From Ylistrum balloti (taxonomy: Eukaryota): 64,000 nt of DNA. The first letter of the stretch is position 1, and each line of letters opens with the position of its first letter. The stretch spans positions 186,001 to 250,000 of the forward strand of contig NW_026782127.1 in NCBI RefSeq assembly GCF_031769215.1, read 5' to 3'. The notes under the pieces were generated by a model that saw nothing but the letters and a program-made list of their open reading frames with translations, had not been told where the DNA came from and ran no database searches. The position numbers and the translations under genes were made by a program. Positions 9,623 to 33,820 of this stretch are shown here, piece by piece.

Positions 9623-12541
9623 TCAAGAAAGCCTCACAGCTGAAAATGTTGCATCTCGTTTAGAAAATTCTTTTTCTTGTTTGCGTCTCTGTTGTTCCAA
9701 ATTTCGCTTCTGGCGCTCAGATCGCTTCTGTTCCTTTATGGCCGCCTCTGCTTGCCATGATAAATCCTCCTCCGCTTCATCATCCCATCCAGTCTCTCGG
9801 TCATCCCAAGTACCTAACTCTGGACCCTGAAATAATCGTGAAAATAAATCATTGTAGCGGTTATCTTGTAAGTACTTCACTTGCTCCCTTATTGATGTCC
9901 TGGTGTGTATTCCATGAAAACATTTACCCCACACAAGGAATAATGTACATTTCTCAATTATTTGCATAAAAAATTAGACAGAAAACCAGAACAATGAAGA
10001 AGAGAGACTAAAACTGGAGTTTGGGGGAAAGGCAGATTTTTCTGTCCTAATTAAAATTTCAAAAACATTGTAGATTCTGTTTTACAGGTTCCTTGGGTAC
10101 ATTCATAGTTTAAGTTAGTATTTTGTCAACATCTATGTTATTTACTGATAATTATTCCTGGAAACATTTTACATGACTTATAATTCACTAAAAACCAATC
10201 CATAAATTACTGGTACATGTGTACTTTGCTAAACTGGAGAACTGACACTGATTTCCAGGTGAAAAATTGTCCTTGAAAACTGACTTTTACTTACAGCAGA
10301 TAAAGGCACATCAGCAGTAGACATAGCAAACTTATTAGACTGGCTTCTCATCTCTTCTTTCTGTTTAATCAGTACCTGTAAGTAATCCAACATGTCATCA
10401 AATTAAAGTATACTGATATCCACCTTTCCCTCCCTACCTCCTCAAGAAAAGATAACTCTACTCATCCACAGATATTCATGTTTAACCTCCCTTCAGTATA
10501 CATTCACACATGTCTTTTTTGACTTGTAACAACCTCCTCCAAATGTACCTTATGTCAATTAAGTAAGAAATGAATTCAGATCTTATTTTGTTTTTGATGC
10601 ATGCAGTATTATAATATCCTATTACATGTAGTAGCTGGTGACTGTTTCACTAAAGAACATTAAGAAGCCAAGCACATGTTATCCACAACCATTAAGCTAA
10701 AGTGTCTTATCCAAAGACACCATCCATACAGCCGTTCCAAAGTGTCTTACCCAAAAACACAATCCATACAGCAGTTCTAAAGTGTCTTACCCAAAGACAC
10801 CATCCATACAGGAGTTCTAAAGTGTCTTACCCAAAGACACCATCCATACAGCAGTTCTAAAATGTCTTACCCAAAGACACAATCCATACAGCAGTTCTAA
10901 AGTATCCTACACAGACACAATTCATACAGCAGTTCTTAAGTGTCTTACCCAAAGACACAATCCATACAGCAGTTCTAAAATGTCTTACCCAAAGACACAA
11001 TCAATACATCAGTTCATAAGTGTCTTACCCAAAGACACAATCCCTACAACAGTTCTAAAGTGTCATACCCAAAGACACAATCCATACAGCAGTTCTAAAA
11101 TGTCTTACCCAAAGACACAATCCATACATCAGTTCTTAAGTGTCTTACCCAAAGACACAATCCCTACAACAGTTCTAAAGTGTCTTACCCAAAGACACCA
11201 TCCATACAGCAGTTCTAAAGTGTCATACCCAAAGACATAATCCATACAGCAGTTCTAAAGTGTCCTACCCAAAGACACAATCCATACAGCAGTTCTAAAG
11301 TGTCTTACCCAAAGACAAAATCCATACAGCACTTGGCAGTCTAGATCTAGGATCTCACTTTCCAAAAAACAGCTAACTGACAAAAGTAGGGATCAAACCA
11401 AGAACATTATATGTAAATCTTGAGGTTTAAATGTTGTTGGCTCTACTGACTGAGGTATTGGAGTCTCCTGGTACAGCTGGTAAAGACATAATTAGTACAC
11501 TGAAATATCATTGTATTAAAATGTGCAAGAATAATAAGCCCTATTTACCTTCTTTTGTTTCTTTATGGTTGGTGTCATGTCTTGAAAATAATCTGGTTCA
11601 GGTTCTGATGATTCTTCCTGAGACAGTGACCTTGACCTTGAATAATTATGATTCACTAATCTCGAATTGTTACTTTGTTCTTGATCCCAACTCTCCCACG
11701 ACTGCAATTCGGGCTGAGACAGAAAAAATTGCAAAACATTCTGAACATATATGTGACTTGACAATATTTTTACCCTAATAATGTCAGTGATACAAGTCGT
11801 CTTTGATGCTTTGACCTTCTGAGATGACTTTGTCCAAATATACATAAAAAAAAAAAATCATAAAAGATATCAACCTGATTTATATGATAGAGAATTTGTT
11901 TTTTCCTGGCTCTTGAAAACCTTCATTTTGACTTCTTAAATTGACAAAGGACAATCAAAATTAGTAAAATATTATTCTATTTCATAAATGACAAAAGTCC
12001 CAGGACTATTACAATTTATAAATTTATAAGTCCCAGGGAAAATCTGTCAATATTGTTTATTTTTCATGTGTACAAAAACAGAGTAAATTAGTAAATTGGA
12101 AAATAATTGAAGCAGCACTTCTCGAAATCTACCTTCATGGTAAAACTTCATATTTTTATAAAATAATTACTACAATTCCTGTAGCACAATCTACATCTAC
12201 TCTAAACCATTTATCTTTGTCTAAATTGGAGTTGTACATCTTCTGATCTAAATATTATCATGCATGCTTATGCCAATGAAAATAACATTTTTATCGTTTC
12301 CTCTCTGTTGTCACAGAGAGAAATGAATAACATAGCTAACTAATCAATGTCAGTCTCCAACCTGTTTTGGTGTGCTTGGTGTTTGTGTGAAATCCTGAGG
12401 AATGCTGTAGTGATTTGTTAATGGCAAAACGGTGTCGGATGTCCGCCTCTTCCTTCTACAGAAAAGACGTTTGAACGGTGAACATATCAGCAGCACAAAA
12501 CCGAAAGTCTTCTTGATGATATTCCACACAACTTTAATCAT
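9623..12541 (-). CDS. EBAG9: Receptor-binding cancer antigen expressed on SiSo cells (RCAS1/EBAG9) ortholog; exons 12541-12362, 11713-11549, 10375-10295, 9826-9623; 209 aa
   Basis: All introns are GT-AG, phase 0. The protein has an N-terminal hydrophobic segment followed by KRLFCRRKRR, then SWESWD, EPEPDYFQDMTPTIKKQKKVLIK, ELGTWDD and a C-terminal coiled coil WQAEAAIKEQKRSERQKRNLEQQRRKQEKE...AVRLS. This matches recalled human EBAG9 motifs (EPDYFKDMTPTIRKTQKIVIK, WQAEEVLRQQK, GVKLS). Confidence 0.93.
10699..11330. repeat. 40-bp minisatellite, about 16 copies, in the EBAG9 intron 10376-11548
   Basis: Unit aagtgtcttacccaaagacacaatccatacagcagttcta, with an internal inverted repeat gtgtct...agacac. 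Confidence 0.95.
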
Positions 12542-13706
12542 CTTGACAGGAAATCGGTGTGCTGGAAAATAAAATGATAAACTCCTTTTAATTTTTTTTT
12601 ATTTCTTACCGATACTTGCTATCATGTCACAACCTATAGAAATGTCACACAAATGTTACAGCCAGGTTAAGCGTAATTGCTTTGTTGCTATCTAATTCTG
12701 ATAAAAAATATATAACTAAATCATTGGTCAGTATATATGTTAAATTATTTGTTTGCATTGTTTATCATCCTACGATCTGCCAGGAACATTTTGAGGCACC
12801 GTCTTTTAGTAGTAGCTGTTGGCAATATGTAGCTACCTCACAGAGCAACACATGGGAGGCCCGTCACATTCCAAACAGAGCAATATTGGCAATTTTGGAA
12901 AAAGTGTCTCAACCAAAGACACAGCCATGTGAGCACAGAGAGGCCTAGCCATTTTCAGTTTCCTGAGAAACACAAACTGTTGTGGGTAAAGAGCATTGAA
13001 CCACACACCTATGATTTTCACCTGATCTTTCGATGGCCATTGTTTAAAATGACTTTGATATTTGCTGTATGACTTATCTCTGTTAGACATATTGAGCATT
13101 TGTCACTGTTATGAGCAGAAATTCAGGATTTGTATTTGTGGCTGGTCACAGGCAGATCTAACCAGGCGGAAACACTTATTGACATCCTTAATACTTCACT
13201 GAATCTGGAATTGTGATCTCCCTGCATCAAATCATATACATTCAAGAAAAAAGTCATACTAGACTTATATAAGCTCTTGGGAACCAGCATCTCACATTGC
13301 CAAATATAATTATGAAACAATTTCAAATGTAACTACAGACTATATACATTTAGCCTTTATGTACACTCACTGTTTCAAATGTGTTTATTAAAAAATTTGA
13401 AAGAAATGTAAGGGTTCTAAAAAGAGTAAGCAAGCCCTAACTTTAATTGGGATATGTAGACCATGTACAATCTAATATTTTTTTTTTGCAGATTTGTAAT
13501 TTTTAAGGACAGATAAGTTGTACTTAAATATACTCTATACATATGCAATGACATAAGGAAATAAAAAAAAAAGAAGATTTTGAGTTTGTTTTCTGGAATC
13601 AGAAATGTAACCAGAGCGACCAGCCTGCTCCCCTCCACCCCATCTGTTTTATATGTAGGTAAGAAGAAATATTCATTTTAATAACTGAGCTTTACTACTA
13701 TACATG

Positions 13707-13785
13707 TAAGCCTGGACTAGGCTTAAACCCTTTTGAGATTCCTCCGTTAGATATAAATGAGTGCCAAGGAGGAATCTCAAAAGGG
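13707..13785. repeat. Double-hairpin palindromic element (foldback A)
   Basis: taagcct-ggact-aggctta (13707-13725), then a perfect 18-bp stem cccttttgagattcctcc (13728-13745) / ggaggaatctcaaaaggg (13768-13785) with a 22-nt loop. Confidence 0.85.
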
Positions 13786-13837
13786 ATAAGGCTATGGTCA
13801 TGCACGTGTCTACACCGCTAAACAGGTACTGGGGCAC

Positions 13838-14535
13838 CGGTAAATCTGGCTATTTATTCAGATATGGCTATATGTTTATAGTGCAAATGTAAACAACTTT
13901 ACCATACTTGGCATACATGATGTGCACATCGAAAAAACTGGCGGTGATTTTAAGGAGCGAGTAAAACAATAGCTTTCTGTCATAAGACACCATTTTCCGT
14001 GAATTGGTTGAATTTCGTCATTGCAATTTTTGATACTTGCATCCCTTTGTCCACATATTCCAATGGTGATACATGGAATTTCCTAAATACGTGATTAAAA
14101 CACCCCCATATTTCACTTGCTTCCACCACACAATTCACAATCATTGCAGACTTTATTTTTTGCACAGAAACATCATGCTGAAAGCACACCTTTAGCCTGT
14201 ATCTGCATCAAAGAGATGCTTATCTGCAGATGACACAATGGGTGAATGACGTCATATTGGATAGACTTTATAAATATACAGTTTGTTTCTAGATAGTGAG
14301 ATACTAGAAATAGGTAACAATGAAATTAAAAAAAAAATAAAACGCCTTAAATCGACCAAATATGCCAAAATCATTCATTTTCACTGACTTACACGATTCG
14401 TTATCCATTTTTTTATCTGCGCGAAAATAATGTGACCGGACATCACCTCGGTGTTTACATATAAGCCCTGTATACATGAACGTATAGTCAGATTTGACTG
14501 TATAGCAAAATCTGCATATAGAGCCAGATTTACCG
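13838..14535. mobile_element. Non-autonomous DNA transposon (MITE) with terminal inverted repeats
   Basis: Perfect 14-bp TIR cggtaaatctggct / agccagatttaccg, extended by imperfect subterminal similarity. TA follows the right end (Tc1/mariner-like), but the left TA is not preserved. No transposase ORF. Confidence 0.65.
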
Positions 14536-14543
14536 TAATCCCG

Positions 14544-14641
14544 TTTGGGATTCCTCATTGGGACTCATTTATATCCCACAAGGGACGTTACCAAACGTCC
14601 GATATAAATGAGTCCCAAGGACTTAGGAGAGGAATCCCAAA
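14544..14641. repeat. Triple-stem foldback element (foldback B), related to foldback A
   Basis: Stems: tttgggattcctc 14544-14556 / 14629-14641; ttgggactcatttatatc 14558-14575 / 14601-14618; ggacgtt 14583-14589 / 14594-14600. It shares gatataaatgagt(g/c)ccaa and gaggaatc(t/c)caaaagg with foldback A. Confidence 0.85.
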
Positions 14642-14994
14642 AGGCATTAGATCTGTCGGTGCTCCAGTAGGCAGTACCCACTAAACATCACGTGTCATGC
14701 AATATTTTACAATGATTATTAAGAATCATAACCGATCTCCTGAATTTCTACAAACATATACGACCGGACATACTTCGAATATGTACCTGTCTATAACACA
14801 AGATGTTAATTTTGTTATCGTAACTACACTGAATATTGCATTACATCCTCATGGATTTCTGCTGCCATCTGTGAGTTTTGGGTTTCCTCAAGGTCAATTT
14901 CATGTTTACTTTATCGGTGTAGAACCTCGTAACAAACAAACCTCTTAGCGACGAGGATTTATAGTTTCAGTTCTTGCCGACAGATGTCGCCAAA

Positions 14995-15007
14995 GTTGCT
15001 AGACAAC
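14995..15007. promoter_or_regulatory. Putative RFX X-box in the shared EBAG9/LKAAEAR1 upstream region
   Basis: gttgctagacaac resembles the GTTGCCATGGCAAC-type X-box and lies 114 bp upstream of the LKAAEAR1 ATG. Confidence 0.45.
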
Positions 15008-15120
15008 AATAAACAGTATGGCGACTACCATGTAGGAATAATATAATTCAACACGGTGTTTATATTAATTTCAACTGGTTAGCGAGACTTATTTATATGT
15101 TTGACCTTTAAAACTGAAAC

Positions 15121-18100
15121 ATGCCGGTAAGTTGTAACACTGGTTGTTTAAACGAAAACTAAATTGTGGGTAAGGGAGCTTCTTTGAACTGTTCAAGGAT
15201 ACCCCAATTTTCCGGATTAAAAAAAAAGATTGCCTGTAATCCGTCACACACTTAAACAATGTCCAGCTCCACACCCTCTCCGCTTCCTCCAGGCATATCT
15301 GCCTAGTGTTGAGTCCCATACATCTAGCATATGTTCAATGAATGACATGTACCAATTTAGGCTTCAAATATACCATATATAAACTATGTAAGTCGGACAG
15401 ACAATATTTTGGCTACTTTACAGAGAATTTGTTTAATAGTGGCAATGTCAGGACCAAATAACAGTGATACTGAAGAAGAATTTTGATACAGCATACTGTA
15501 TTTCTGTATTCTTAATCCAAATGTGTAATTCACGGGGGTGCAATAATTATGTTGCAAAACAGAAATGTAAAAACAAACGAAGATGAGCAATGTGTTTGAC
15601 AGAGACTATGTAATATATAGATTACTGAATGTGTGCTTGATTTTTGTACAGGAAAAACTCCCACCTATAGATCGTGATAATGGCGATCCTAATGAGAAAT
15701 TCAAGGCAAGGAATTGGAAGAAAAAGGATATCAGAAAAATGAATCCCCAACAAAGGAGTAGATACATGGCTGTGAGTAGTTGATATAAAGAAGATTGATA
15801 TGAATCAAATATTTCATTGTTTTGCAGTATTTTTAACCATTTTTCTTTTACTATACTATTTATATTGATTGCCATGTAGATTAAAGAACAGTCACTTTTA
15901 ACTTTTGTACTTTGAACATCATGACATGAAAATTTTAGTAGTTTTTTGTTTTTATCTAGAAGTACTGCAGTGCATTTGGTTAAATAAAAGATAGCACCAC
16001 CAGAAAATTTTGATAATCATTTAAAAAGAAAAAGGATAAGATATGAATTAGAAATGGTTTTTAGAAATAAATTATGAAGTGATATATGCAAGGAGACATG
16101 AAAAACAATATGATTTTACATATAATGATCAACTTCTGTTGTGATCATGACCAGTATGAAGAGCCATCCAAGGAGGCAGTGGAAGCTCAGAGTGTATCAA
16201 ACAAACGTCTGCTTGACAGGAAACGTAATGAAATGAGGTAAGTTTACAATGCACCTTAAACTTCAAGAGATTCATCCTCAAAAATGATTACTTTCAGTAC
16301 TTCAATGGAATATTGTTATTAAAATTAAATTTCAGTATTAGTCATTAGACAAAAAGACCTGACAGATTGTTCCGGCTGAGTATTGTCATATCAAGTTCAC
16401 AAAAGATCACCAACAAAACCTTTATGTTGCCTCTCTTATAACCGCTGTCAGAAAAATCACAGATGGAAATGCATCTTTCCAAACAAAAATATAACTTCCG
16501 TGGTTGTGGATTATGAGGAGATTTGCATTTTGAAAAAAACATTCTATATTTTACCATATAAAATATTGTTTGCTTGTTTATATTTATCTATTTAGTTTTC
16601 CCTTTTTTTCATAATAAAGCAAATGTTCATAATATTTTGATTATCAGGGAGTATTGCCAATAAAGCATATACATTTTTTGTGGTCTTAACTGCTGTTAAA
16701 AAGATATACCTGATAAAGATAGTAATGTACCAATGATTGAAATGAATAGAAAATTATGATAGAAAAGTTAGTGAAACCAATTAAACAATGCCAATGTTGA
16801 AAAGAATTAATTTTCAGAGTTCAGGTATTATACAATATTTCTGAAATGAAAAACTTAAGCATTCTGGCACTGGTTTACTAAAATTGTAGGAACTTACAAT
16901 CAGCAGACTACACTGGTTAATTGTGTTTATACAGTCACACCAGACTTAAACGTCACCAGTATATACCTGTTTGTAAAGTCCACAGTCCTACCTATCTATA
17001 AAGGTCACTGGGGTTCAAATGCAATACAAACCATAGTTTAACCTCTATTTGGGGTTCATCTGCCTAAAAAGGCCATGTTTCCCCTCTGGGTGGCCTTTAT
17101 AGACAGGTTTGCCAGTATTCAATAACAAGAAACTACACATAAATAGAATCAAAATTTCTATGTAGTTTTGATGGATTGATGGATTTAATTAACTTTCAGA
17201 TTTATCAATATTTGAATTTTAAAGACAAATAGATAACCTGTTAAATCAGTTAAAATGATAATTGACTGGATATGAGGATTTAATTGACGATTATGAAAAG
17301 GGAACAACATCCCATATGTATTGAAAGAATATTTAACAATTGACTTATTATTTAGATTTATTAATTAAGCTGATTTTAAAAGGCCATTTATACTTCATTT
17401 CAATTTGTTGCCAATTTTAAACAGTTTCAACATTAATCTTAGTTGTAAATTATAATTATTCTAAGATGTTAAAATTTCAGTTGAACAATTTTAATTGATA
17501 TGACACATTGTTTTACCAGGATAAATGCTCCACTGCCAGCCGAGGAGTATGATGAAAGAGAAAAACATGCCAAGTTAATAGGACAGTTGAAGTAAGTCTG
17601 TAGAACTGTTTAGGTACACAAGGTATTGTGTTAAAATATGATTGTGCTAAGTGAAGTTTCTATATTGCATTTTTTATATAACAATTATTGATAAGGACAA
17701 ATTCATCTTTGTGGTAATATTTTTAAAAGTATTAATGTGCTAAAATGTGATTGTTTACAGTATGTAGATAATAGATGAACACTGAAAATCTATGTTACTT
17801 AATTAAGGTTGTAAACATTGAGATGTTACTGAAAATAAATTGTGAAAGAAAGAACATTAATACATGTATCTCTATACAAATATTTTTAAGAATTATTGAA
17901 GGAGGATGGTGTGGTAAAACATAAAGGATATTCTCAGTGTCAAATTGAAATTTCAATAATAAATTTTGTTTTAGAGCTGCTGAATCAAGAAATAGATTAA
18001 GAATAATGAGGTTACGCTACCAATCAAACAAGGTAAGATGTGACATCCACCTTATTGTAGGAATAAGTCACAGGGCCAATGTATATAAATGTATTACCAG

Positions 18101-23424: not shown

Positions 23425-26179
23425 CTAGTTATCTGTCCTTGTGAAGAATAAATTGGCTGTTAAAGAGTCAGAACCCTTCAATTTAGACTTAAAACCACAT
23501 CAAGATGAAGGTTCTATGTTACTTCTGAAAATACAGATATCCCCTATGATATAAGTTTACTGCAGTTTAAAATATAGTTGTTTTGCTGTTTTAATTGTCT
23601 GTAAAAATATTACCATAGAAACTGTGTAAATATTGTCAGTTTTAATAGGGTATAAACCTATCAATTTAACAGAGTTGTTGGTAGAATGTAAAGAAGTAGA
23701 ACTAATTGTATATATATATTGTGTTTTATTTTTATCAAAAATAATGTTTAGGTTAGAAGACACACTGGTCTGTATCGTCATACATATATATTAGGTTCTT
23801 TCTTTTGATGGAAAACTTCACTCTGTTATATATAAAAAACATATTTTCTTTGTATGAATACGATATAGGAAAGAAAAGAAATTTACGGTGACTGTAGATT
23901 GAAAGAAGAATATAGGATTTCTCCTAAGCACGATATTTTTTATGCATTTACACAATTCACTTTCATGTTGGTACTGTAATACAGCCACTTTTCTTAACTA
24001 TTTTTCTTAATGTTTAATCTTCACCTGATCACGGAGATTCGCATTTTTTTATTGGTTGTATTGCACAAGGATGTGTATTTTAATATATTAGAAAACATCT
24101 CTATTTCACTCATCGTGGGCGTCCCTGTATCATTATATACCGTATATATAGACATTATTTACATGTGTAATTATCGTGGTATGTCAACCATTATAAACCT
24201 GTGTCGACTTCCCATGTATATGATAACAATTCTTTAACAAATTAAATAAATATGATTATGTATAGATGAAATTATGATGATATAATTAGCTCCCTCGTGT
24301 GTTTTTACTGATTCATAACAGGATTGAAGAATTTTATAACGCCAGACATGAAAGAATCATATGAATTAGTTTTATGTACAGATTTTGTATGTGGTGTATA
24401 TTGTATGTTGAAAGATGCATGTATGAATGAATTTTTTAAAAAAATATTTTATGTGTGCAGACTCATCTTTGCGTGAATAGTGCTGCCGTTTAAATGTACT
24501 ACATTTCATATGTATTTTTATTTTATTCATATTCAATGATAATATTGTACTTAATTACTGAATTTTATGATTTGTCCACCGTCTTCTATACTATACTTAT
24601 TGAGAGCATTTTTGTGATAAGTTGGCTTTCATAAAGTTAATGGCATGGTATAGGTCTCGGTAGGTCATAGAAGATACATACTATATTTGTACATGTGATT
24701 TTAGTTTTTAGAATTTTTGTGGTAAGTTGTCCCAAATATCAAGATTGCACACTGCCTTCACAGACCATTCAGACCTCACTCATATCACAAGACAGGTTAT
24801 GTTTTTCCCCGTGAAAATCCATTGTTTTTGGGACAGAAAATAAGTTTTCTTAAACAAAAGCTGAGGTCTGTATCGAATGTAAAGGCAAGGATACGTATGT
24901 GTAGGAATTTTTATACAGTATTCACTATTCAAAGTTTTCACATCTACTTATAGAACTGGAGATATAAATCTCTAATTTGCTTGAAATTTAATATCTGTTT
25001 ATGATTTGACTTTGAATCACAAGGAATAGAGTTTCTGAATTATCTGTGACAGTATGGCGGTGTTGAACACTATGACGTGAGACTAGTGAGAGAAAGTCTT
25101 TGGTTATTGTTATGAAGGTTGTGATATTTTGTGCGACACAAAATTAAAAAAAATCACATCTATTAGTTTTCCTGCGTTTTCTGTCATTTTACTATTTGGA
25201 AACTTTTTAATGGAAGCTGACCGGACTTTGACTTCTAGCAGCTGTTAAGAATGAATCTAGTGTTGATATATTCCTCATACACTTGTCATATCGAATTAAT
25301 GGTTTATAAATTGATTGATCAAATGAATTTTGACTACTTCTCATATGAATTATCGTCGTTATACCTAAGTATCTATTTCTTTATACCAGTCAGATCCATT
25401 GTAAATACAGCTCTTATTTTGAAAACATGACATTACTTAGACTTGACCGAAATTGGTCAGCATTAATGCAGAACATCGATTAGTTGACATATAAATTACA
25501 ATAGATTATTTCAAACGGAAGAAGAAACAGTTTTCACTTGTGATATTTTATAACATTCCATTAAACACTAAAACGATCTGGAAATTATTTTGTTGCACAT
25601 CTTGGGTGATTACATATTACATTTTCATCAAATTTAAATAAATGTCAATAATTTCTTAAATGTGTTACATGTAAAGAAAAAATGAACAAATCCACGTATA
25701 TTATCAGGAATTCTTTTCCGTGCTTTACATTTTAAAAGAAAAAAAAAGAATCCGGACGGATTTGAACTAAAACTCACAAGGCGGATTGCAGATACGCGAC
25801 GTGGAAGCCACTACTGAAAGCATTTCGCTTTCACTAAGCTATCAACACAGTTGGTTAAAGTATTGGCAGATGTCTCAATTTTAAAGTATTACAATGATGT
25901 AGCCCATACAGACAAGTAAATGTGTATATTACATAGGCCGGAGCAGATATACATGGTATTGGAAATTTATGTATATCTTCCGAATAAAGCCTTAATTAAG
26001 CATGAGAAACAATATATTTTCTCCAGGAAGTCATCACCCTGACAGGAGACAATTTTAAAGCATTTGTTATCATAGATTGGTTTGGCTTTTATAATATAAC
26101 TTTCTATCGACAGTTTTGGTTATTTAAGAATCATCCCTATGTATGGTATCAATGTCAGAGGAGTAAGTGTGTTTGTGGG

Positions 26180-26405
26180 AGATGACGATATGTTCCGGAA
26201 GTCGCAATGTGAAGTGTGTGATCCGGATTTATAGTGCCATCACACTGAAGTATACCCGCCGACAACAGACAGATCAGGCGTTACACTGCCACAAGGCTGA
26301 GTGTTAAGTGGTAATAGGTAACTACCATTCATATTTATTGTGGTATGTCTCGACCGGGAACATAATCCAAAGCTTTCTTCACTAGAGCGAATGCTCAACT
26401 CAAAG
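26180..26405 (-). mobile_element. Decayed tRNA-derived SINE-like remnant
   Basis: tatagtgccatcacactgaag...tggtatgtctcgaccgggaacataatcc...ctagagcgaatgctcaact resembles the antisense body and tRNA head of mollusc SINEs, heavily diverged. Confidence 0.35.
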
Positions 26406-26754
26406 TCATCAAACGGGACGAAGTGTGAAGGGAGATATTAAGGAAAGGAGTTATTTAGAAAGAAGATATTAGATAATGCATTGGATGCAACAGGTACAAA
26501 TTTTACAGCCTACCTACAGATCAGGCTGCTATTGGGACATAACACAGTATTTTCTCGTACGTCACTACAGGTATCTACCTAGATCTCCATAGGTCTATAT
26601 AATCTAACACAATAGTTTGTCATGTTCCCCTATCATTATCGTAATAATGACAGGTCGGTCGATCTATACTGTGGAGAAAACCAACCGCTTTAAGAGATCA
26701 CAATGTTATGACAGATGAATTGGATGTCGTGTCTTCGAGCTGTAGTCTGTTTAG

Positions 26755-29012
26755 TAATAAGTATCAAACAGTCTGTTTCCTAATTAGTATCAAACAGTCT
26801 GTTTCCTAATTAGTATCAAATAGTCTGTTTCCTAATTATTATCAAACGGTCTGTTTCCTAATTAGTATCAAACGGTCTGTTTCCTAATTAGTATCAAACG
26901 GTCTGTTTCCTAATTAGTATCAAACGGTCTGTTTCCTAATTATTATCAAACGGTCTGTTTCCTAATTAGTATCAAACGGTCTGTTTCCTAATTAGTATCA
27001 AACGGTCTGTTTCCTAATTAGTACCAAACGGTCTGTTTCCTAATTAGTACCAAACGGTCTGTTTCCTAATTAGTACCAAACGGTCTGTTTCCTAATTAGT
27101 ATCAAACGGTCTGTTTCATAATTAGTACCAAACGGCCTGTTTCCTAATTAGTATCAAACGGTCTGTTTCCTAATTAGTATCAAACGGTCTGTTTCCTAAT
27201 TAGTATCAAACGGTCTGTTTCCTAATTAGTATCAAACGGTCTGTTTCCTAATTAGTATCAAACGGTCTGTTTCCTAATTAGTATCAAACAGTCTGTTTCC
27301 TAATTAGTATCAAACGGTCTGTTTCCTAATTAGTATCAAACAGTCTGTTTCCTAATTAGTATCAAACGGTCGGTTTCCCAATTAGTATCAAACAGTCTGT
27401 TTCCTAATTAGTATCAAACGGTCTGTTTCCTAATTATTATCAAACAGTCTGTTTCCTAATTAGTATCAAACAGTCTGTTTCCTAATTATTATCAAACAGT
27501 ATGTTTCCTAATTAGTATCAAACAGTCTGTTTCCTAATTAGTATCAAACAGTCTGTTTCCTAATTAGTATCAAACGGTCTGTTTCCTAATTAGTATCAAA
27601 CGGTCTGTTTCCTAATTAGTATCAAACGGTATGTTTCCTAATTAATATCAAACGGTCTGTTTCCTAATTAGTATCAAACGGTCTGTTTCCTAATTAGTAT
27701 CAAACGGTCTGTTTCCTAATTAGTATCAAACGGTCTGTTTCCTAATTAGTATCAAATAGTCTGTTTCCTAATTAGTACCAAACGGTCTGTTTCCTAATTA
27801 GTATCAAACAGTCTGTTTCCTAATTAGTATCAAACGGTCTGTTTCCTAATTAGTATCAAATAGTCTGTTTCCTAATGAGTATCAAATAGTCTGTTTCCTA
27901 ATTAGTATCATTAGTATCAAACGGTCTGTTTCCTAATTATTATCAAACAGTCTGTTTCCTAATTAGTATCAAACGGTCTGTTGCCTAATTAGTATCAAAC
28001 AGTCTGTTTCCTAATTAGTATCAAACAGTCTGTTTCCTAATTAGTATCAAAGTCTGTTTCCTAATTAGTATCAAACGGTCTGTTTCCTAATTATTATCAA
28101 ATAGTCTGTTTCCTAATTAGTATCAAACAGTCTGTTTCCTAATTAGTATCAAACGGTCTGTTTCCTAATTATTATCAAATAGTCTGTTTCCTAATTAGTA
28201 TCAAACAGTATGTTTCCTAATTAGTATCAAACGGTCTGTTTCCTAATTAGTATCAAATAGTCTGTTGCCTAATTAGTATCAAACAGTCTGTTTCCTAATT
28301 AGTATCAAACAGTCTGTTTCCTAATTAGTATCAAACAGTCTGTTTCCTAATTAGTATCAAACGGTCTGTTTCCTAATTAGTATCAAAGTCTGTTTCCTAA
28401 TTAGTATCAAACAGTCTGTTTCCTAATTAGTATCAAACAGTCTGTTTCCTAATTAGTATCAAACAGTCTGTTTCCTAATTATTATCAAACAGTCTGTTTC
28501 CTAATTAGTATCAAACAGTCTGTTTCCTAATTAGTATCAAATGGTCTGTTTCCTAATTAGTATCAAATAGTCTGTTTCCTAATTAGTATCAAACGGTCTG
28601 TTTCCTAATTAGTACCAAACGGTCTGTTTCCTAATTAGTATCAAATGGTCTGTTTCCTAATTAGTATCAAATAGTCTGTTTCCTAATTAGTATCAAATAG
28701 TCTGTTTCCTAATTAGTATCAAATAGTCTGTTTCCTAATTAGTATCAAATAGTCTGTTTCCTAATGAGTACCAAACAGTCTGTTTCCTAATGAGTACCAA
28801 ACGGTCTGTTTCCTAATTAGTATCAAATAGTCTGTTTCCTAATGAGTACCAAACAGTCTGTTTCCTAATTAGTATCAAATAGTCTGTTTCCTAATGAGTA
28901 CCAAACAGTCTGTTTCCTAATTAGTATCAAATAGTCTGTTTCCTAATTAGTATCAAATAGTCTGTTTCCTAATGAGTACCAAACAGTCTGTTTCCTAATT
29001 AGTATCAAACAG
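26755..29012. repeat. 26-bp minisatellite, about 86 copies
   Basis: Unit tagtatcaaa(c/t)(g/a)gtctgtttcctaat (period 26761 to 26787). Confidence 0.98.
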
Positions 29013-29548
29013 TACACACGAGTATAAATAAAATTGTCCGTGTTTTAATAAGTGATATTCAAAATCGCAGATCTTTCCAGATGGCTTTCATCTACCTATC
29101 AATCTATTCTTATTCTCCATTTCTCACCTGATGGTTTGGTAAATTTCAGTCTCGATTTTGCAAAATCCTCAAATCTTTTAAACGTATAAAGGTTAGTGGG
29201 CTTTTCGTTTTAAACTGATAAAGTTTGTGTAATAATTGCAATATTGATATTGCTTCAGATTTAAAGAACAAGCTTTCCTCGAACTAGATGTTATGTGTAC
29301 TTACATGTACGACACGTGTACCCAGCATAATTAGACATATGGAAATCATTATTTAATTTTTAACACAGAACCTAAATAAATGTTTGTAAAAGATATATAC
29401 CCGTACCGAACAGATAAGTGACTAACATACACATACTCTATGTGTTTTTCTCCTCACTGTGCTGTCAGTTGCGATATCTATTTCAGAACTGCATTATTAA
29501 TTGGAAACAAATCTGTGACAAGCTGTATTATTGTAATCAATAGACTAT

Positions 29549-29560
29549 CGCGCATGCGTG
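29549..29560. promoter_or_regulatory. NRF1-like motif upstream of a probable non-coding first exon (donor at 29621) of the qtc-like gene
   Basis: cgcgcatgcgtg lies about 60 bp before gacag|gtaagt (29620/29621). Confidence 0.4.
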
Positions 29561-30689
29561 CTTAACGGTGTACACGTGTTCAAGGTGTTTTTTCTGTACT
29601 TGGTATAACGGATGTGACAGGTAAGTTAAGATCTTCATTCTTTTATAATTTCAGATTATAATTTCATTTTGTAACAAATGAAACACCAAGAAAACGCTTG
29701 TGAAGAGAAATGAACTGGACATCAATTGTCAATATAAAATGTGAAAGTTTATACACTGCACAGCAATTACCAGCAATGGCTATTACCCAACTTGTTAAAT
29801 AAGATCCCTGCTCGAGATTCTTTAACTTATTGCCAGTTATTTGCATTTTCTAGATGTTGGATTATTAAGACTTTGTAGTCGTGAGCTTCGTCATTTAGTT
29901 CTTCGATCTTTTACGTAAGTTGTATATAAAAAAAAAAGTCAGGTTATGGTGAGTTCCAGACACTTGGCGCCTGCTATCAGCTTCATTTTAGTAAATGAAA
30001 TCTATTTTCATTAAAATGGTTTTATCTTATAAATGATTCGATACTAGTGACGCTATAAACAATTATACAATCACGTTTAATATGATAGAAATATTATCAA
30101 TCATTTAAAGAAGGTAACTTCCTTGAGATACAACATACTATGTAAGGCAGATTTCTGTATACCTATGCATTTATTGACATAAAGGTAACTTTTCGCTTGA
30201 TATGTTTACACTTTTACAAGTGAAATGATTTTACTTAAGTGAATAGCATTGTTCTCGTGTCACTAAGTAACGTGTCATTGCGTTGCTAAGATGATTATTT
30301 TGTTCCTGTGAATCAGCGAAATAAGACTTGCGGTATTGACCACCGTGTTATTGTGTGTAATGATGTAAAAATTTTAGATATCACCAAATATTGATCATCA
30401 TGTAAACTCCAGCTGGTGTATCATACAATAAAATACACGAGTCTTATCGTTGGTTAACAATACCTAAAGCAAAATTGATATAGATCCTCCACTATATTCA
30501 ATCTTTCTCAGTGCTTCAGGTTATTTTTTTATTTTGCATCTACGAAAGTGTCTGTTTGAACTACACATCAAGCATTCCAGAAATATTGTAACACAAATTG
30601 TTTATCTAAAGCAGTTTAACACAGTTCTTTGTAAAATTTATGTTTTTTGTTTCAGAAGACAGAGAAATGAACTGAAGCAACAGGTGAAC

Positions 30690-33600
30690 ATGTCGGATGA
30701 AATACCAAACCACAATGTGGAACAAGAAGCTGAATACACTACAACTCGTTCATCAAATCAGGCCGGAGCCTTAGAACCGGACATGGAAGAAGACAGCTTA
30801 GACGGGGACTCTGATCACTTCAATTTACAGGAGGTCAATGCTGGCAAAAACGATCAAGTTCTTGGCTCATCTGAATACGACAATACATATCAACAGTCTC
30901 CTCGCTCTCATTCTGACTCCATAGATTCCCTTAGCCAATCAAATTCAAGCACAAATGAAAATTCCGAATTAACTGCTCTCTTGCCTTGCGCGGAATATCA
31001 AGAATCAGATGTAGAAAGAGGCAACACAGAGACGAAATCACGACTTCCTTTGAAATGTGCCTTGGGATTAAACCGGAAGTCTTCCCTGCCTAAGCAAAAA
31101 ATACAAAAAGACATCAAAGTGCAAAAGAATTTAACAAAGAGTAAAACGGTTGACTTGGCGAAAGGAGTTTTCTGTCAGGGTGAAAAGAAAAGACTTAACC
31201 GTGGAGAATCCCAGACAGGTTTGAGCGAAAGTCGCGCTGTAAGAGAGACCTTAACGAGTCGCTTGCGATTTGAGAAACGGCACATTCCTCATGACCAAGA
31301 TTGTGAAGGCGAGGACTACATGACGCCTACACAAAGGAAGGACCAGTTGCTGAAGGATCTAAAGATCCAAGTGAAGGATTTAGCGAGTGAGGTAGAAGCA
31401 CGTGATCTCCAGATAGAGAGATTGAAACAGGATATAGATCAGGAGGCACGAGAGATAATCGACAGGAAGAAAGAAGAGGCTAGACTGCTTCAGTCTAACC
31501 TCGACATCTTACAAACTGAACACGATGACCTCAAGATGTCCTATCAAAAATCTCTTTGTAGCATCGTCGATTTGGAAGAATCCATTTCTCAACTAAATGT
31601 GAGTAAAGAAATATTGAAAAGGGTTTACCGACATTGTAAAGATTGTAGAAAAGACATAAAATGGAAAAGATCCTTTAGATATATAGATTTAGATACAGTA
31701 GAGCAAAAACAGTGAATTAAACTGCATCAACCAGCTGTTTCATCCTTTTAGGATTCGTCAATGATAAGGGCCTAGATTCTAAAGCCCAGCAGGCGTCTGA
31801 AGAAAATTCAAAATCTAGATTTTACGGTGCACTAATCTCCCATTATTTAAATATCAATATAACATTATCAGATTAAGCTATATCAATGTCCGTTTGTGTA
31901 GTTATCGTTATAATTTTTTAATGGGCCGAAACGTGTCAACGCAATATGAAGTTAAATTGTCATCATTCAAACCACAATGCTGGTCTTATGTTGTAATGTG
32001 TTCATGCCTTGATTTTTAAAACAAGTGTCTATTATGTTCCAGGAACGTATAGTGATCCAGGAGAAAAGAAACGAGCGAATCTACTTGGAAATGTATAAGA
32101 AGGGGCAAGAATCAGCTCAATTTGAACGAAATGTTGAGGTCTGTATACATAATTAGAGCTATGTGTAAAATATTTTGGGGTAATTACATATTCATTTATT
32201 TACCTATACATTTTCCTCGCACAAATTGTACTCGTGTAACATTTTATGATATTTTTTAATAACTGGTTAAAATTTGCTATTCTAGCAGTTTAGACAATCT
32301 GTGTGCTATACTTGTTCGTATTGATTTGGGAATGTCTGTTAAATAACATCAACATTTTTTTTCGTTTCAACTATTGTAAACTTACTGATTACTTAACACA
32401 GATAATCAATTAATTAATAAAAATCTGCAATCGAACGTAGGCGAATATTGATTGAATTGGCTATTCACGAGATTCTGTTTATTAGGCTATTTTCTAAAAT
32501 AGCCTTGTGAAAATAACTTTGACTTATCAAGCTGACAAAACTTTGATCAACAGGTGACAAGGTAACATGTGTTTGATTTATTGACTGACCAAACAGCACG
32601 CGATGTGCACGCAATGTGCATGCAATGATATCATTACTTCTCAATTTACACCCGACTCAGTAAACGGTCCAAACGTGTTAGAACAAGAAAATACTTTTGC
32701 TGAGATTGTTGTGAGGAAAACATTTTATATGATTATATGACATTTTTGTGCAAAAGCATCAGTGACTAAAGGGTGACATTATTTTGCAATTTTTTGTTTG
32801 TTCGTTTTTTGTTTTTTGTTGTTTTTTTTTAATTTATTTTTTATTTATTCATCTTAACTACAATTGATAACAATTACTATATTTCCTGTTCAAAGGAACA
32901 TAAACATATGGTCCATATGTTTAGGTAGTTTACAATAAATGTGAACCCATGTTTGCCGTTAGAATTTGAATATCTCTTCATACAATATTAAAGAAAACCA
33001 TCTCCGGAAGGTAGAAACATGTATGTGTGTCGGAGTAATGCATTCTGACGAACCAGACAATAGGTGTATACTTTCAAAGTTGACGTGTTTATTTCTAATG
33101 CGCATTTTGTAGGGATATCAATACTCTGTTCTCAATGGCATGAAATACAATATACGTCCGTCCGTCCGTCCGTCCGCCGTCCGCACTCATTCAGGAGTAG
33201 TGGTGAGGAGAAAAAGCAGTTCATCCCGAAAAAAAAATCCATCATTAGACTTTGCATTGTAATTTCACTAAAGTACACAGGAATGCGTTTTGCAAAATCA
33301 TTATGTTATTTCTTTTTGCTCTCTGAGGTTGGAGATATTTAAAGTCATCGATGAAGCGGAAGACGCTTATTCTTTCTGAACACTCGGTCTTATTCTCCTT
33401 GTACTTTTTCAGAAGTCTCCATGTAAATTATTCTTTTGTTTATATTTTTGGTATAGTTTTATTGAATTTGAATTAAGATATAAATATTTCCTTCTGTCGT
33501 AGTTGGAGCTGCTTGCAGTAAATTCTGAAAGTTCAAGTATGACGATGAAAGAACTCATAAGAAAGCTGGTTGTGACAGAATCCGAACTGGCAAAGTGGCA

Positions 33601-33820
33601 ATCTTTTCGTCGGCAGGAGTCATACGAATCAGCAGAGAAACCGGAAACACAGGCGGATGTGACGTTACGATTTCTCAAGGACTCTTTCTTTCATTACCTA
33701 ACAGACATGAAAGACTCAGACCGCCATCTTAGAGCCATGATCAGAATTTTTAATTATACTGATGTTCAGAAAAAGAGAATATCAAAATGCGTCACTGAAA
33801 AACAGAACAAAAGTGCATAA
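30690..33820 (+). CDS. qtc: Quick-to-court-like coiled-coil protein with C-terminal GRIP domain; exons 30690-31598, 32043-32138, 33503-33820; 440 aa
   Basis: Phase-0 GT-AG introns; acceptor tttcag|30656 lies before the ATG. The protein has an acidic low-complexity N-terminus, YMTPTQRKDQLLKDLK plus coiled coil, IYLEMYKKGQESAQFE (recalled Drosophila qtc EMYLKGQEAAKFE), and a GRIP-like TLRFLKDSFFHYLTDMKDSDRHLRAMIRIFNYTDVQK. The start could extend into an upstream exon. Confidence 0.78.
33340..33480 (+). repeat. Interspersed repeat fragment, also at about 52120-52260 (-) and partly 36225-36300 (-)
   Basis: gtcatcgatgaagcggaagacgcttattctttc...ggtcttattctccttgtactttttcagaagtctcc matches the reverse complement of 52190-52260 (gtcgtcaatgaagcagaagacgcttactcttcc...ggtcttattctctctgtactttttctggagtctcc). 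Confidence 0.7.

What the first reader, a model, noticed from the sequence alone, without database searches (positions are those of the whole stretch)
9623..33820. EBAG9 lies next to a syntabulin-like gene, echoing the vertebrate EBAG9-SYBU neighbourhood
Seen: EBAG9 and the qtc-like gene are about 18 kb apart, separated only by LKAAEAR1. Established: human EBAG9 and SYBU (syntabulin/GOLSYN) are adjacent on 8q23, and both are Golgi/vesicle-traffic proteins. Seen plus recalled: the qtc-like protein carries a motif that aligns with the syntabulin/syntaphilin signature. Inference: a microsynteny older than the protostome-deuterostome split, which would also make qtc the invertebrate relative of SYBU/SNPH. 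I do not know of this link having been described. Orientation differs (divergent here, convergent in human as recalled).
Basis: partly seen in the sequence, partly recalled or inferred. Interest (0 to 1): 0.75.

Follow-up and report, generated by a model that had tools for sequence, protein, structure and literature searches.

The report
Scallop EBAG9 beside a syntabulin relative
In this scallop, EBAG9 lies close to a gene that really is a distant relative of vertebrate syntabulin and syntaphilin, but other invertebrates do not share the neighbourhood, so an ancient conserved gene pair is not shown.

Summary
The window comes from the scallop Ylistrum balloti. EBAG9 (minus strand), an LKAAEAR1-like gene (plus) and a 453-aa quick-to-court (qtc)-family gene (plus, LOC132550005) lie in that order with nothing else between them.

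A profile built only from invertebrate qtc proteins scores 50 bits on bird syntabulin, against a best of 11.5 bits for 3000 shuffles. hhalign gives 97% probability. 19 of 37 family members hit Pfam Syntaphilin. The shared part is a Y-[LM]-T-P-x-Q-x-K motif plus a coiled coil. The C-termini differ: a GRIP-like domain in qtc, a hydrophobic tail anchor in SYBU. No paper in the searched library links qtc with SYBU or SNPH.

The microsynteny half is not supported.
- EBAG9–SYBU adjacency is real in vertebrates (barn owl, killifish).
- In the clam Mercenaria the two genes are about 17 Mb apart on one chromosome.
- No partner lies within 10 kb in oyster, abalone, the annelid Dimorphilus, a crinoid or amphioxus.
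- Side and orientation also differ between scallop and vertebrates.

What is conserved (scallop, chiton, nemertean) is a head-to-head EBAG9–LKAAEAR1 pair. The region beyond LKAAEAR1 in chiton and nemertean could not be fetched, so a wider block is not excluded.

The parts
9623..12541 (-). EBAG9 (RCAS1) gene, coding part. Exons are about 12362-12541, about 11546-11719, about 10295-10375 and 9626 to about 9898, with the stop at 9623-9625. The inner exon borders are approximate.
   Evidence: tblastn with EBAG9 proteins of Mercenaria, Solemya and Saccostrea. The last exon as query gives 91 hits, named RCAS1/EBAG9 by their sources. Splice sites were read from the sequence.
15640..20099 (+). LKAAEAR1-like gene, head-to-head with EBAG9. 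Conserved exon pieces lie at 15640-15780, 16152-16238, 17512-17598, 17973-18035, 19050-19181 and 20031-20099.
   Evidence: tblastx and tblastn matches to the genes called PF15478 LKAAEAR next to EBAG9 in Lineus (L009) and Liolophura (L010). The motif LIGQLK | AAESRNRLRIMRLRY is split by an intron at the same place. A weak Pfam LKAAEAR hit, E 0.026, falls on the first exon.
25072..33820 (+). qtc-family gene LOC132550005 (453 aa). Exon 1 ends at 25076 (ATGAC, then GTGAG). The other exons are 30656-31598, 32043-32138 and 33503-33817, with the stop at 33818-33820.
   Evidence: 100% identity to P0001. ATGACGTGAG occurs exactly once in the window, at 25072. Donor and acceptor sites were read.
31266..31598 (+). 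Syntaphilin/syntabulin-type region of the qtc-like protein, residues 206-316, continuing into exon 3 (32043-32093). The invariant motif Y-M-T-P-T-Q-R-K starts at 31317.
   Evidence: hhalign of qtc family against bird SYBU covers columns 186-314 against 244-357. HMM test. Motif scan. Invariant columns Y223, T225, P226, Q228, R229.
33650..33778 (+). GRIP-like C-terminal domain, residues about 398-440, core R-F-L-K-D-S-F-F-H-Y-L-T.
   Evidence: 16 of 37 family members hit PF01465 at E<0.01. The nearest Atlas clusters are GRIP clusters. The best Foldseek matches of the AF2 model are the golgin-245 GRIP domain chains 1r4a_E and 1upt_D, with TM by target 0.72 and 0.71 and rmsd 1.9 and 1.7 Å, but E 1.2-8.
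12542..15639 (.). Intergenic stretch of about 3.1 kb between the divergent EBAG9 and LKAAEAR1-like genes. It is a candidate shared (bidirectional) promoter region.
   Evidence: Gene positions as above. The same 5'-5' arrangement, with gaps of about 1 kb or less, occurs in Lineus and Liolophura. Promoter activity was not tested.

Best explanation
Three ordinary genes lie here in the order EBAG9 (minus), LKAAEAR1-like (plus) and a quick-to-court-family gene (plus).

The qtc-family protein is a true but distant homologue of vertebrate syntabulin and syntaphilin. The homology covers one module: a short non-helical motif (C/H-rich stretch, then Y-L/M-T-P-x-Q-x-K) followed by about 100 residues of coiled coil. 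In the vertebrate proteins this part lies in the region reported to bind kinesin-1, microtubules and syntaxin (recalled knowledge). The ends differ. The invertebrate protein finishes with a GRIP-like domain, the kind of module that recruits golgins to trans-Golgi membranes through Arl1. SYBU and SNPH finish with a hydrophobic tail anchor. My inference is that qtc proteins are motor or microtubule-linked adaptors attached peripherally to Golgi-derived membranes, and that SYBU/SNPH are the same adaptor core attached by a membrane anchor.

The closeness of this gene to EBAG9 in the scallop is most likely not a retained, constrained microsynteny. Both genes seem to belong to one ancestral linkage group: they share a chromosome in Mercenaria and in vertebrates. 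The scallop juxtaposition is then either a lineage-specific rearrangement that placed qtc next to the older EBAG9-LKAAEAR1 head-to-head pair, or a coincidence of the kind a genome-wide scan is bound to meet.

Shown: gene identities, the homology, vertebrate adjacency, non-adjacency in Mercenaria, and the EBAG9-LKAAEAR1 pair in three lophotrochozoans. Inferred: the function of the module, the linkage-group argument and the chance estimate.
For: Homology:
- 19 of 37 qtc-family proteins hit Pfam PF15290 Syntaphilin at E<0.01, best 1.5e-8. Precomputed PF15290 tags sit on spider and gastropod members.
- BLASTP of spider qtc against stork SYBU gives E 4e-8, and scallop P0001 against the same SYBU gives E 5e-5, both across the motif.
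- hhalign of the qtc family (A1) against bird SYBU (A2) gives 97% probability, E 1e-10, 114 columns.
- An HMM built from invertebrate sequences only scores 50.4 bits on the SYBU region (E 3e-13 at Z=20000). 3000 shuffles have mean -2.2, sd 2.4 and maximum 11.5; the reversed sequence scores 4.1.
- Generic coiled coils in the PDB reach at most 24 bits with the full qtc profile.
- qtc proteins pick out the owl SYBU motif exon by tblastn.

Architecture:
- qtc proteins have no hydrophobic segment (maximum KD19 0.26-1.30), while SYBU shows 1.5-1.65 at its tail.

Vertebrate adjacency:
- In the owl, EBAG9 (+) and a PF15290 gene (-) are convergent and 6 kb apart.
- In killifish, ebag9 and sybu are 4.4 kb apart (PMC12134989).

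Non-conservation:
- Mercenaria has EBAG9 at 18.54 Mb and qtc-like at 35.41 Mb of CM038774.1.
- In Saccostrea cucullata the two genes are on contigs of different length.
- No EBAG9 or LKAAEAR1 lies within 10 kb of qtc-like in S. echinata, Mercenaria or Haliotis. In the scallop LKAAEAR1 ends only 5 kb upstream.
- No qtc/SYBU-like sequence or motif lies within 10 kb of EBAG9 in Dimorphilus, Anneissia, Branchiostoma, Lineus or Liolophura.
- The 3' neighbour in amphioxus starts with an N-terminal membrane segment and proline- and tyrosine-rich motifs, unlike SYBU.

Older pair: EBAG9-LKAAEAR1 lie 5'-5' in scallop, chiton and nemertean.
Against: - A priori, two given genes of one linkage group lying within two genes of each other in a second phylum is improbable. 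My rough estimate is a few per thousand, so neutral retention of an old neighbourhood in two slowly rearranging lineages cannot be dismissed.
- The scallop qtc gene lies beyond LKAAEAR1. That is exactly the stretch I could not see in chiton and nemertean, because the LKAAEAR1 genes fill the 10-kb flank.
- Most of the negative results rest on 10-kb flanks and on tblastn or tblastx sensitivity.
- Only bird SYBU sequences were available as real vertebrate sequences. SNPH itself was compared only through the Pfam model.
- The proposed function of the shared module is untested in any invertebrate.
Confidence: 0.62

Rival explanations
1. True ancient neighbourhood. The bilaterian ancestor carried LKAAEAR1, EBAG9 and the SYBU/SNPH/qtc ancestor as close neighbours. 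The scallop and the vertebrates both kept the proximity. Vertebrates then split the block across paralogous regions after genome duplication, and clam, oyster, abalone, Dimorphilus, crinoid and amphioxus lost it.
For: - The genes are adjacent in the scallop (window) and in vertebrates.
- The two genes are still on one chromosome in Mercenaria.
- EBAG9-LKAAEAR1 is an old pair in lophotrochozoans, so this spot of the genome can be stable.
- Read as the reverse complement, the scallop order qtc(<-) LKAAEAR1(<-) EBAG9(->) keeps qtc in the same direction relative to EBAG9 as SYBU(<-) in EBAG9(->) SYBU(<-), only on the other side.
- From memory, not tested here: human LKAAEAR1 and SNPH are both on chromosome 20, and EBAG9 and SYBU both on 8q, two regions generally regarded as paralogous.
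Against: - The pair is absent in all seven other invertebrate genomes sampled, three of them molluscs.
- The gene lies on the opposite side of EBAG9 in scallop and vertebrates.
- There is an intervening gene in the scallop.
- The immediate EBAG9 neighbours in amphioxus and crinoid are other genes.
- Only two lineages are linked, whereas the published criterion needs four (PMC3514665).
Confidence: 0.22
2. Pure coincidence without any shared linkage history. The two genes came together in the scallop lineage by an unrelated rearrangement, and the resemblance to the vertebrate neighbourhood carries no historical signal at all.
For: - A scan of a whole genome inspects tens of thousands of neighbouring pairs. 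My rough estimate is that a few dozen chance coincidences with human neighbour pairs are expected genome-wide (inference, not computed on data).
- There is no support from other species.
Against: EBAG9 and qtc-like share a chromosome in Mercenaria, which fits a common linkage group rather than complete independence. This rival differs from the best explanation only in degree.
Confidence: 0.12
3. The qtc-SYBU/SNPH similarity is convergent coiled-coil composition rather than common descent, so the neighbourhood comparison has no basis.
For: - Most of the aligned region is coiled coil. P0001 itself does not reach Pfam's threshold: no PF15290 hit, and 11 bits for its Pecten orthologue.
- The Atlas feature search of the coiled coil returns only generic coiled-coil families.
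Against: - The best-conserved shared columns are the non-heptad motif (Y, T, P, Q invariant in 37 qtc proteins and in 10 SYBU).
- 0 of 3000 composition-matched shuffles come near the real score.
- Generic coiled coils score less than half as much.
- The match is colinear over 114 columns.
Confidence: 0.04

Closest known systems
Vertebrate syntabulin (SYBU/GOLSYN) and syntaphilin (SNPH), Pfam PF15290
   Same: They share the N-terminal module: a cysteine/histidine-containing stretch, the Y-L-T-P-x-Q-x-K motif and a following coiled coil of about 100 residues, preceded by a serine-rich disordered N-terminus. SYBU is the immediate neighbour of EBAG9 in vertebrates.
   Different: SYBU and SNPH end in a hydrophobic tail anchor (KD19 1.5-1.65). 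The scallop protein has no hydrophobic segment and ends in a GRIP-like domain. P0001 alone does not reach the Pfam threshold. The second invariant qtc motif (M-Y-L-E-M-Y-R-K-G-Q) aligns only loosely with K-Y-F-I-D-I-N-I-Q-N in SYBU. The position relative to EBAG9 differs: 5' side, one gene between, divergent, against 3' side, adjacent, convergent.
Drosophila quick-to-court (qtc) and arthropod qtc proteins
   Same: This is the same family. Spider, tick and hemipteran proteins named quick-to-court align over the motif, the coiled coil and the C-terminal GRIP-like domain (E 1e-14 to 5e-18 against P0001 residues 215-453; alignment). NCBI already names abalone members 'quick-to-court-like'.
   Different: The scallop protein is shorter (453 aa) and only 25-31% identical to arthropod members. 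The Drosophila protein itself was not among the sequences retrieved. The courtship phenotype known from flies says nothing yet about molluscs.
GRIP-domain golgins (golgin-245, golgin-97, GCC88, GCC185)
   Same: A long coiled coil is followed by a C-terminal helical domain of about 45 residues. Pfam GRIP hits occur in 16 of 37 family members, and the best structural matches of the model are the golgin-245 GRIP domain chains.
   Different: The match is weak: no PDB sequence hit at E<=1 and Foldseek E 1.2. The position I take, by eye and from memory of the GRIP consensus, to correspond to the Arl1-contacting tyrosine is an invariant phenylalanine (R-F-L-K-D). The coiled coil is of the syntaphilin type, not golgin-like.
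Conserved ancient microsyntenic pairs (Irimia et al. 2012, PMC3514665)
   Same: EBAG9-LKAAEAR1 looks like a typical member. It is 5'-5' oriented with a short intergenic distance and is found in three species of two phyla.
   Different: EBAG9-qtc/SYBU is linked in only two lineages, with different orientation and side. That paper required linkage in four or more lineages. I could not check its supplementary lists, since none are held.

Membership tests
Syntaphilin/syntabulin family (PF15290) | N-terminal conserved motif (Y-L-T-P-x-Q-x-K) followed by a colinear coiled coil | tested here: met
   Motif at 31317 in the window and in the owl SYBU exon. hhalign 97%, E 1e-10. HMM 50.4 bits against a shuffle maximum of 11.5. 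BLASTP E 5e-5 and 4e-8.
Syntaphilin/syntabulin family (PF15290) | Score above Pfam's gathering cut-off (25 bits) for this protein | tested here: not met
   P0001 has no PF15290 hit at E<=10. Its Pecten orthologue reaches 11.1 bits. At family level, 19 of 37 members hit at E<0.01, best 1.5e-8, and several carry precomputed PF15290 tags.
Syntaphilin/syntabulin family (PF15290) | C-terminal hydrophobic tail anchor | tested here: not met
   The maximum 19-residue Kyte-Doolittle mean is 0.45 in P0001 and 0.26-1.30 in 11 other qtc members. In bird SYBU it is 1.53-1.65, about 55 residues from the end.
Syntaphilin/syntabulin family (PF15290) | Binding to syntaxin-1, kinesin-1 heavy chain or microtubules | not testable with these tools
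   Biochemical property.
GRIP-domain proteins (PF01465) | Significant match to the GRIP profile at the C-terminus | tested here: inconclusive
   16 of 37 family members hit at E<0.01, best 5.7e-6. P0001 itself has no hit. The C-terminal profile finds no PDB chain at E<=1. The nearest Atlas clusters are 91-96% GRIP, but with scores of 0.83-0.86, below 0.9.
GRIP-domain proteins (PF01465) | GRIP fold (short helical bundle as in golgin-245) | tested here: inconclusive
   AF2 model: pLDDT 77.8, four helices. The top Foldseek hit of 350,542 chains is 1r4a_E (golgin-245 GRIP, TM by target 0.72, rmsd 1.9 Å), and 1upt_D is also listed. E-values of 1.2 and 8.4 are not significant for so small a domain.
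GRIP-domain proteins (PF01465) | Conserved tyrosine that contacts Arl1-GTP; Arl1-dependent Golgi localisation | not tested
   By eye, the corresponding position appears to be an invariant Phe (F405 in R-F-L-K-D). I made no residue-level alignment to a solved GRIP domain, and localisation needs an experiment.
Ancient conserved microsyntenic pair (criterion of PMC3514665) | Linkage (four or fewer intervening genes) in four or more independent lineages | tested here: not met
   EBAG9-qtc/SYBU is linked in the scallop (window) and in vertebrates only. The genes are 16.9 Mb apart in Mercenaria. No partner lies within 10 kb in Saccostrea, Haliotis, Dimorphilus, Anneissia or Branchiostoma. The far side of LKAAEAR1 in Lineus and Liolophura was not visible.
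Ancient conserved microsyntenic pair (criterion of PMC3514665) | Conserved relative orientation | tested here: not met
   In the scallop the genes are divergent with LKAAEAR1 between them (window). In the owl they are convergent and directly adjacent.
EBAG9 / RCAS1 | Orthology of the minus-strand gene at 9623-12541 | tested here: met
   The last exon finds 91 proteins at E<=0.001, named RCAS1/EBAG9 where named. Orthologous loci carry PF28220 RCAS1_C. N-terminal, middle and C-terminal exons align with bivalve EBAG9.
LKAAEAR1 (PF15478) | LKAAEAR motif and similarity to annotated family members | tested here: met
   The motif LIGQLK | AAESR spans an intron. Six exon matches to the PF15478-tagged genes of Lineus and Liolophura. 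The direct Pfam hit is weak, E 0.026.

The most novel reading that the evidence does not exclude
The bilaterian ancestor had a three-gene block made of the ancestors of LKAAEAR1, EBAG9 and syntabulin/syntaphilin/qtc. The scallop still shows it whole. Vertebrates distributed it over two paralogous regions after genome duplication: EBAG9 with SYBU on one, LKAAEAR1 with SNPH on the other. The qtc family is then the pre-duplication orthologue of SYBU and SNPH, which exchanged a GRIP domain for a tail anchor.
Probability: 0.2. Interest if true: 0.6.

Novelty: new variant of a known kind. Interest (0 to 1): 0.42.

Why it matters
Reviews and comparative studies treat syntaphilin and syntabulin as lacking insect counterparts; PMC2374702, for example, reports that they were 'not detected in insects'. 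The data here show that the quick-to-court family of molluscs and arthropods carries the same N-terminal module joined to a different membrane-targeting end. None of the roughly 8.4 million searched papers mentions qtc together with either vertebrate protein, although automatic Pfam tags on some qtc proteins already hint at the link. This gives a molecular hypothesis for a fly behaviour gene of unknown biochemistry, and it gives a genetically tractable invertebrate relative for two vertebrate transport and docking adaptors. The synteny claim, which was the finding proper, does not survive as stated. This is useful as a caution: a two-lineage coincidence of neighbours is weak evidence. The EBAG9-LKAAEAR1 head-to-head pair is a small, testable case of a conserved divergent gene pair.

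Tried and rejected
- Pfam scans of the single window exons gave nothing useful for EBAG9. The Pfam copy held appears to lack PF28220, and the other hits were only weak coiled-coil matches.
- Atlas feature searches of the coiled coils of P0001 and of SYBU returned generic coiled-coil families and were uninformative.
- The word-based search could not be used for EBAG9. The longest stop-free exon (114 aa) limits candidates to 199 aa or fewer, below full-length EBAG9. I therefore spent the single exhaustive search on the EBAG9 last exon, not on the qtc profile.
- The third word search, with the owl SYBU last exon, returned only bird SYBU in its 120 rows. No SNPH sequence and no non-avian SYBU was obtained.
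- Two contig look-ups were lost on shorter isoforms that are not on record.
- The PDB sequence search found no solved SNPH/SYBU or GRIP relative.
- The search for RNA runs found one run of unknown kind, kept as contigs and holding 64% of a mostly intronic stretch, so probably DNA. I did not lay reads, and the exon 1-exon 2 junction (25076 to 30656) rests on the NCBI protein model and the unique ATGACGTGAG site.
- I considered that the 273-aa gene convergent with crinoid EBAG9, and the 664-796-aa gene downstream of amphioxus EBAG9, might be SYBU-like. I rejected both, because tblastn, the motif scan and reading of the ORFs all failed to support it.
- No human contig was fetched or compared. The human map positions mentioned are from memory.

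Full report
**Source and observation**

The window matches Ylistrum balloti (Ballot's saucer scallop). The 303-aa main exon of the plus-strand gene at 30690-31598 is 100% identical to NCBI protein LOC132550005 (P0001, 453 aa). The window has no N.

On the minus strand, EBAG9 runs from its start codon at 12541 to its stop at 9623. Its exons align with EBAG9 of Mercenaria, Solemya and Saccostrea. Its last exon, searched exhaustively, finds 91 proteins at E<=0.001. Wherever these carry a name, it is 'receptor-binding cancer antigen expressed on SiSo cells'.

Between the two genes lies a real LKAAEAR1-like gene on the plus strand, about 15640-20099. Its name-giving motif is split by an intron (LIGQLK | AAESR). 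Six exon pieces match the Pfam-LKAAEAR genes of a nemertean and a chiton.

The protein begins M-T-R, and the only ATGACGTGAG in the window is at 25072. The start codons of EBAG9 and qtc-like are therefore 12.5 kb apart, and LKAAEAR1 ends about 5 kb before the qtc-like start. I found no tRNA, no Rfam family and no other convincing ORF in between.

**What the qtc-like protein is**

Word-based searches found orthologues in pectinids, oysters, pearl oyster, clams, abalones, other gastropods and cephalopods. More distantly they found spider, tick and hemipteran proteins that NCBI names quick-to-court.

In an alignment of 37 of them (A1) the invariant columns fall in three places:
- Y-x-T-P-x-Q-R, consensus Y-L-T-P-T-Q-R-K-D;
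- M-Y-x-K-G, consensus M-Y-L-E-M-Y-R-K-G-Q-E-S-A;
- the C-terminal R-F-L-K-D ... H-L-x-A-I core.

Scanning each member against Pfam gave Syntaphilin (PF15290) for 19 of 37 (best E 1.5e-8) and GRIP (PF01465) for 16 of 37 (best 5.7e-6). The next family reached only 4 members. P0001 itself stays below threshold for both.

An AF2 model of the last 90 residues (pLDDT 77.8) has the golgin-245 GRIP domain as its best structural match among 350,542 chains. The TM-score by target is 0.72 and the rmsd 1.9 Å. The E-value is not significant for so small a domain, and a sequence profile of the domain finds no PDB chain. I therefore call the domain GRIP-like.

**Test of homology with SYBU/SNPH using real sequences**

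I needed vertebrate sequences obtained from a tool, so I fetched the barn-owl EBAG9 locus. Its 3' neighbour is a 659-aa gene tagged PF15290. The exons of that gene in the locus include the motif exon (…N-P-E-Q-Y-L-T-P-L-Q-Q-K-E-V-T-V-R-H-L-K…) and the large last exon. A word search with the last exon returned bird syntabulins, and ten of them form alignment A2.

The results were as follows:
- BLASTP of spider qtc against stork SYBU: 35% identity over 81 residues, E 4e-8.
- BLASTP of scallop P0001 against the same SYBU: E 5e-5 over the motif.
- hhalign of A1 against A2: 97% probability, E 1e-10, 114 columns. The alignment runs colinearly from just before the motif through the coiled coil.
- An HMM built from the 37 invertebrate sequences only (residues 200-345 of P0001) scores 50.4 bits on the SYBU region (E 3e-13 for a proteome-sized search). 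The 3000 composition-preserving shuffles have mean -2.2 and maximum 11.5, and the reversed sequence scores 4.1.

As a further control, the full qtc profile against all PDB sequences reaches at most 24 bits on generic coiled coils. The best-conserved shared columns are outside the heptad pattern. I regard homology of this module as established.

The C-termini are not homologous. SYBU has a hydrophobic segment near its end (Kyte-Doolittle 1.5-1.65), whereas the qtc proteins have none (0.26-1.30) and end in the GRIP-like domain.

**Is the link known?**

None of the papers searched mentions quick-to-court together with syntaphilin or syntabulin, and none uses phrases such as 'syntaphilin homolog'. 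A 2008 comparative study states that syntabulin and syntaphilin were not detected in insects (PMC2374702). A 2017 mosquito paper mentions the GRIP domain of qtc.

On the other hand, precomputed Pfam tags already put PF15290 on several qtc proteins, and on 13% of an arthropod qtc cluster in the ESM Atlas. The link is therefore implicit in databases. I cannot exclude that orthology resources list it.

**The synteny claim**

Vertebrate adjacency is real. In the owl, EBAG9 (+) and SYBU (-) are convergent and 6 kb apart. In killifish the order is ttk, ebag9, sybu, gdf6, with 4.4 kb between ebag9 and sybu (PMC12134989). Mammalian papers list the two genes together.

For invertebrates I used the twelve contig look-ups allowed, each limited to 10 kb on either side of the gene.

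| Species | Result |
|---|---|
| Mercenaria mercenaria (clam) | EBAG9 at 18.54 Mb and qtc-like at 35.41 Mb of one chromosome (CM038774.1): linked, but 16.9 Mb apart |
| Saccostrea cucullata (oyster) | The two genes are on contigs of 644,569 and 125,293 bp |
| S. echinata, Mercenaria, Haliotis asinina | Around qtc-like, neither EBAG9 nor LKAAEAR1 found by tblastn or tblastx; in the scallop LKAAEAR1 ends only 5 kb upstream |
| Dimorphilus (compact annelid, seven genes in view), Anneissia (crinoid), Branchiostoma floridae (two assemblies), Lineus, Liolophura | Around EBAG9, no qtc/SYBU-like sequence and no Y-x-T-P-x-Q-x-K motif in any frame |

The same tblastn queries recover the owl SYBU motif exon, which serves as a positive control. 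The amphioxus gene just downstream of EBAG9 starts with an N-terminal membrane segment and proline/tyrosine-rich motifs, so it is not SYBU-like.

**What is conserved instead**

In Lineus and in the chiton, the gene immediately upstream of EBAG9 and divergent from it is LKAAEAR1, with a gap of about 1 kb or less. This is the arrangement seen in the scallop, where the gap is 3.1 kb. The exon matches, and the shared intron inside the LKAAEAR motif, confirm orthology.

In both Lineus and the chiton the LKAAEAR1 gene fills the 10-kb flank, so I could not see what lies beyond it. This is the main gap in the survey.

**Weighing**

The published systematic survey of metazoan microsynteny accepted a pair only if it was linked in at least four lineages, with vertebrates counting as one. 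It also found conserved pairs enriched in 5'-5' orientation (PMC3514665). EBAG9-qtc/SYBU is linked in two lineages, on opposite sides of EBAG9 and in different relative orientation. EBAG9-LKAAEAR1 is linked in three species of two phyla and is 5'-5'.

My rough estimate, an inference and not a computation on data, has two parts. Two given genes of one linkage group of about a thousand genes end up within two genes of each other with a probability of a few per thousand. A scan over all neighbouring pairs of a genome should nevertheless meet dozens of such coincidences with human neighbour pairs.

Given the shared chromosome in Mercenaria, a common ancestral linkage group is plausible. From memory, human LKAAEAR1 and SNPH are both on chromosome 20, and EBAG9 and SYBU both on 8q, which fits this but was not tested. 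I put about 0.2 on a truly ancestral close neighbourhood. I put about 0.75 on a scallop-lineage juxtaposition or coincidence within a shared linkage group.

**How it most likely works**

Shown: a protein with a syntaphilin-type motif and coiled coil, a GRIP-like end and no membrane anchor.

Inferred: the shared module is the functional core of an adaptor. In SYBU and SNPH the corresponding region is reported to hold the kinesin-1, microtubule and syntaxin-binding activities (recalled, not tested). The C-terminal module decides which membrane the adaptor sits on: trans-Golgi-derived membranes through an Arl1-type interaction for qtc, and vesicles or mitochondria through a tail anchor for SYBU and SNPH. 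An invariant Phe appears, by eye, to replace the Arl1-contacting Tyr of canonical GRIP domains. That leaves the Arl1 step uncertain.

No regulatory coupling between EBAG9 and qtc-like is suggested by the data. A shared promoter for EBAG9 and LKAAEAR1 is a reasonable hypothesis.

**Verdict**

- Observation: confirmed.
- Homology: supported, and apparently undescribed in the literature.
- Ancient EBAG9-SYBU microsynteny: not supported by the available survey, though not fully excluded.
- Interest: moderate, carried by the homology and by the EBAG9-LKAAEAR1 pair rather than by the claim as made.

Noticed in passing
window 9623-20099; L009 1026-12883; L010 765-14610: EBAG9 and LKAAEAR1 form a head-to-head (5'-5') pair in the scallop, the chiton Liolophura and the nemertean Lineus, with gaps of about 3.1 kb, under 0.5 kb and about 1 kb. 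The pair was not seen within 10 kb in Mercenaria, Dimorphilus, a crinoid, amphioxus or the owl. No paper co-mentions the two genes.
   Followed up: partly
window 10660-11300, minus-strand reading: The EBAG9 intron holds a tandem array of units of roughly 120-140 bp. These read as repeated peptide-like ORF pieces (…L-E-L-L-Y-G-L-C-L-W-V-R-H-F-R-T-A-V-W-I-V-S-L-G-K-T-L…) in all three frames.
   Followed up: no
window 43312-45177 (-): A single uninterrupted 621-aa ORF with several C2H2 zinc fingers and acidic low-complexity stretches. It is probably an intronless zinc-finger gene.
   Followed up: no
window about 52800-55900 and about 57900-62000: A unit of roughly 5 kb is tandemly duplicated. It shows near-identical short ORFs (53262-53468 and 58184-58390; 53662-53841 and 58584-58763) and paralogous longer ORFs (54211-54732 and 59748-60164; 55208-55822 and 61266-61925) of unknown family.
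   Followed up: no
window 50647-51347 (-): ORF fragments resemble a Tc1/mariner-type transposase (…H-D-N-A-K-P-H-V-A-R…). This is probably a decayed DNA transposon.
   Followed up: no
window 19767-19924 and 62516-62724: A microsatellite reads as (T/Q)-D-R-Q or N-R-Q-T repeats. One copy lies between the last two exons of the LKAAEAR1-like gene.
   Followed up: no
protein P0148 (UniRef C3ZTW9, Branchiostoma floridae, 540 aa): An old amphioxus gene model joins an F5/8 type C domain protein to the EBAG9 C-terminus. It is probably a fused gene model, since current models give 210-216 aa.
   Followed up: no
L005 38039-38230 and 35810-36934 (-): In owl SYBU an intron falls inside the shared coiled coil (…K-L-K-E-R | E-T-E-I-E-E-L-K…). 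In the scallop the whole motif and most of the coiled coil lie in one exon, so the intron positions of the shared module are not conserved.
   Followed up: partly
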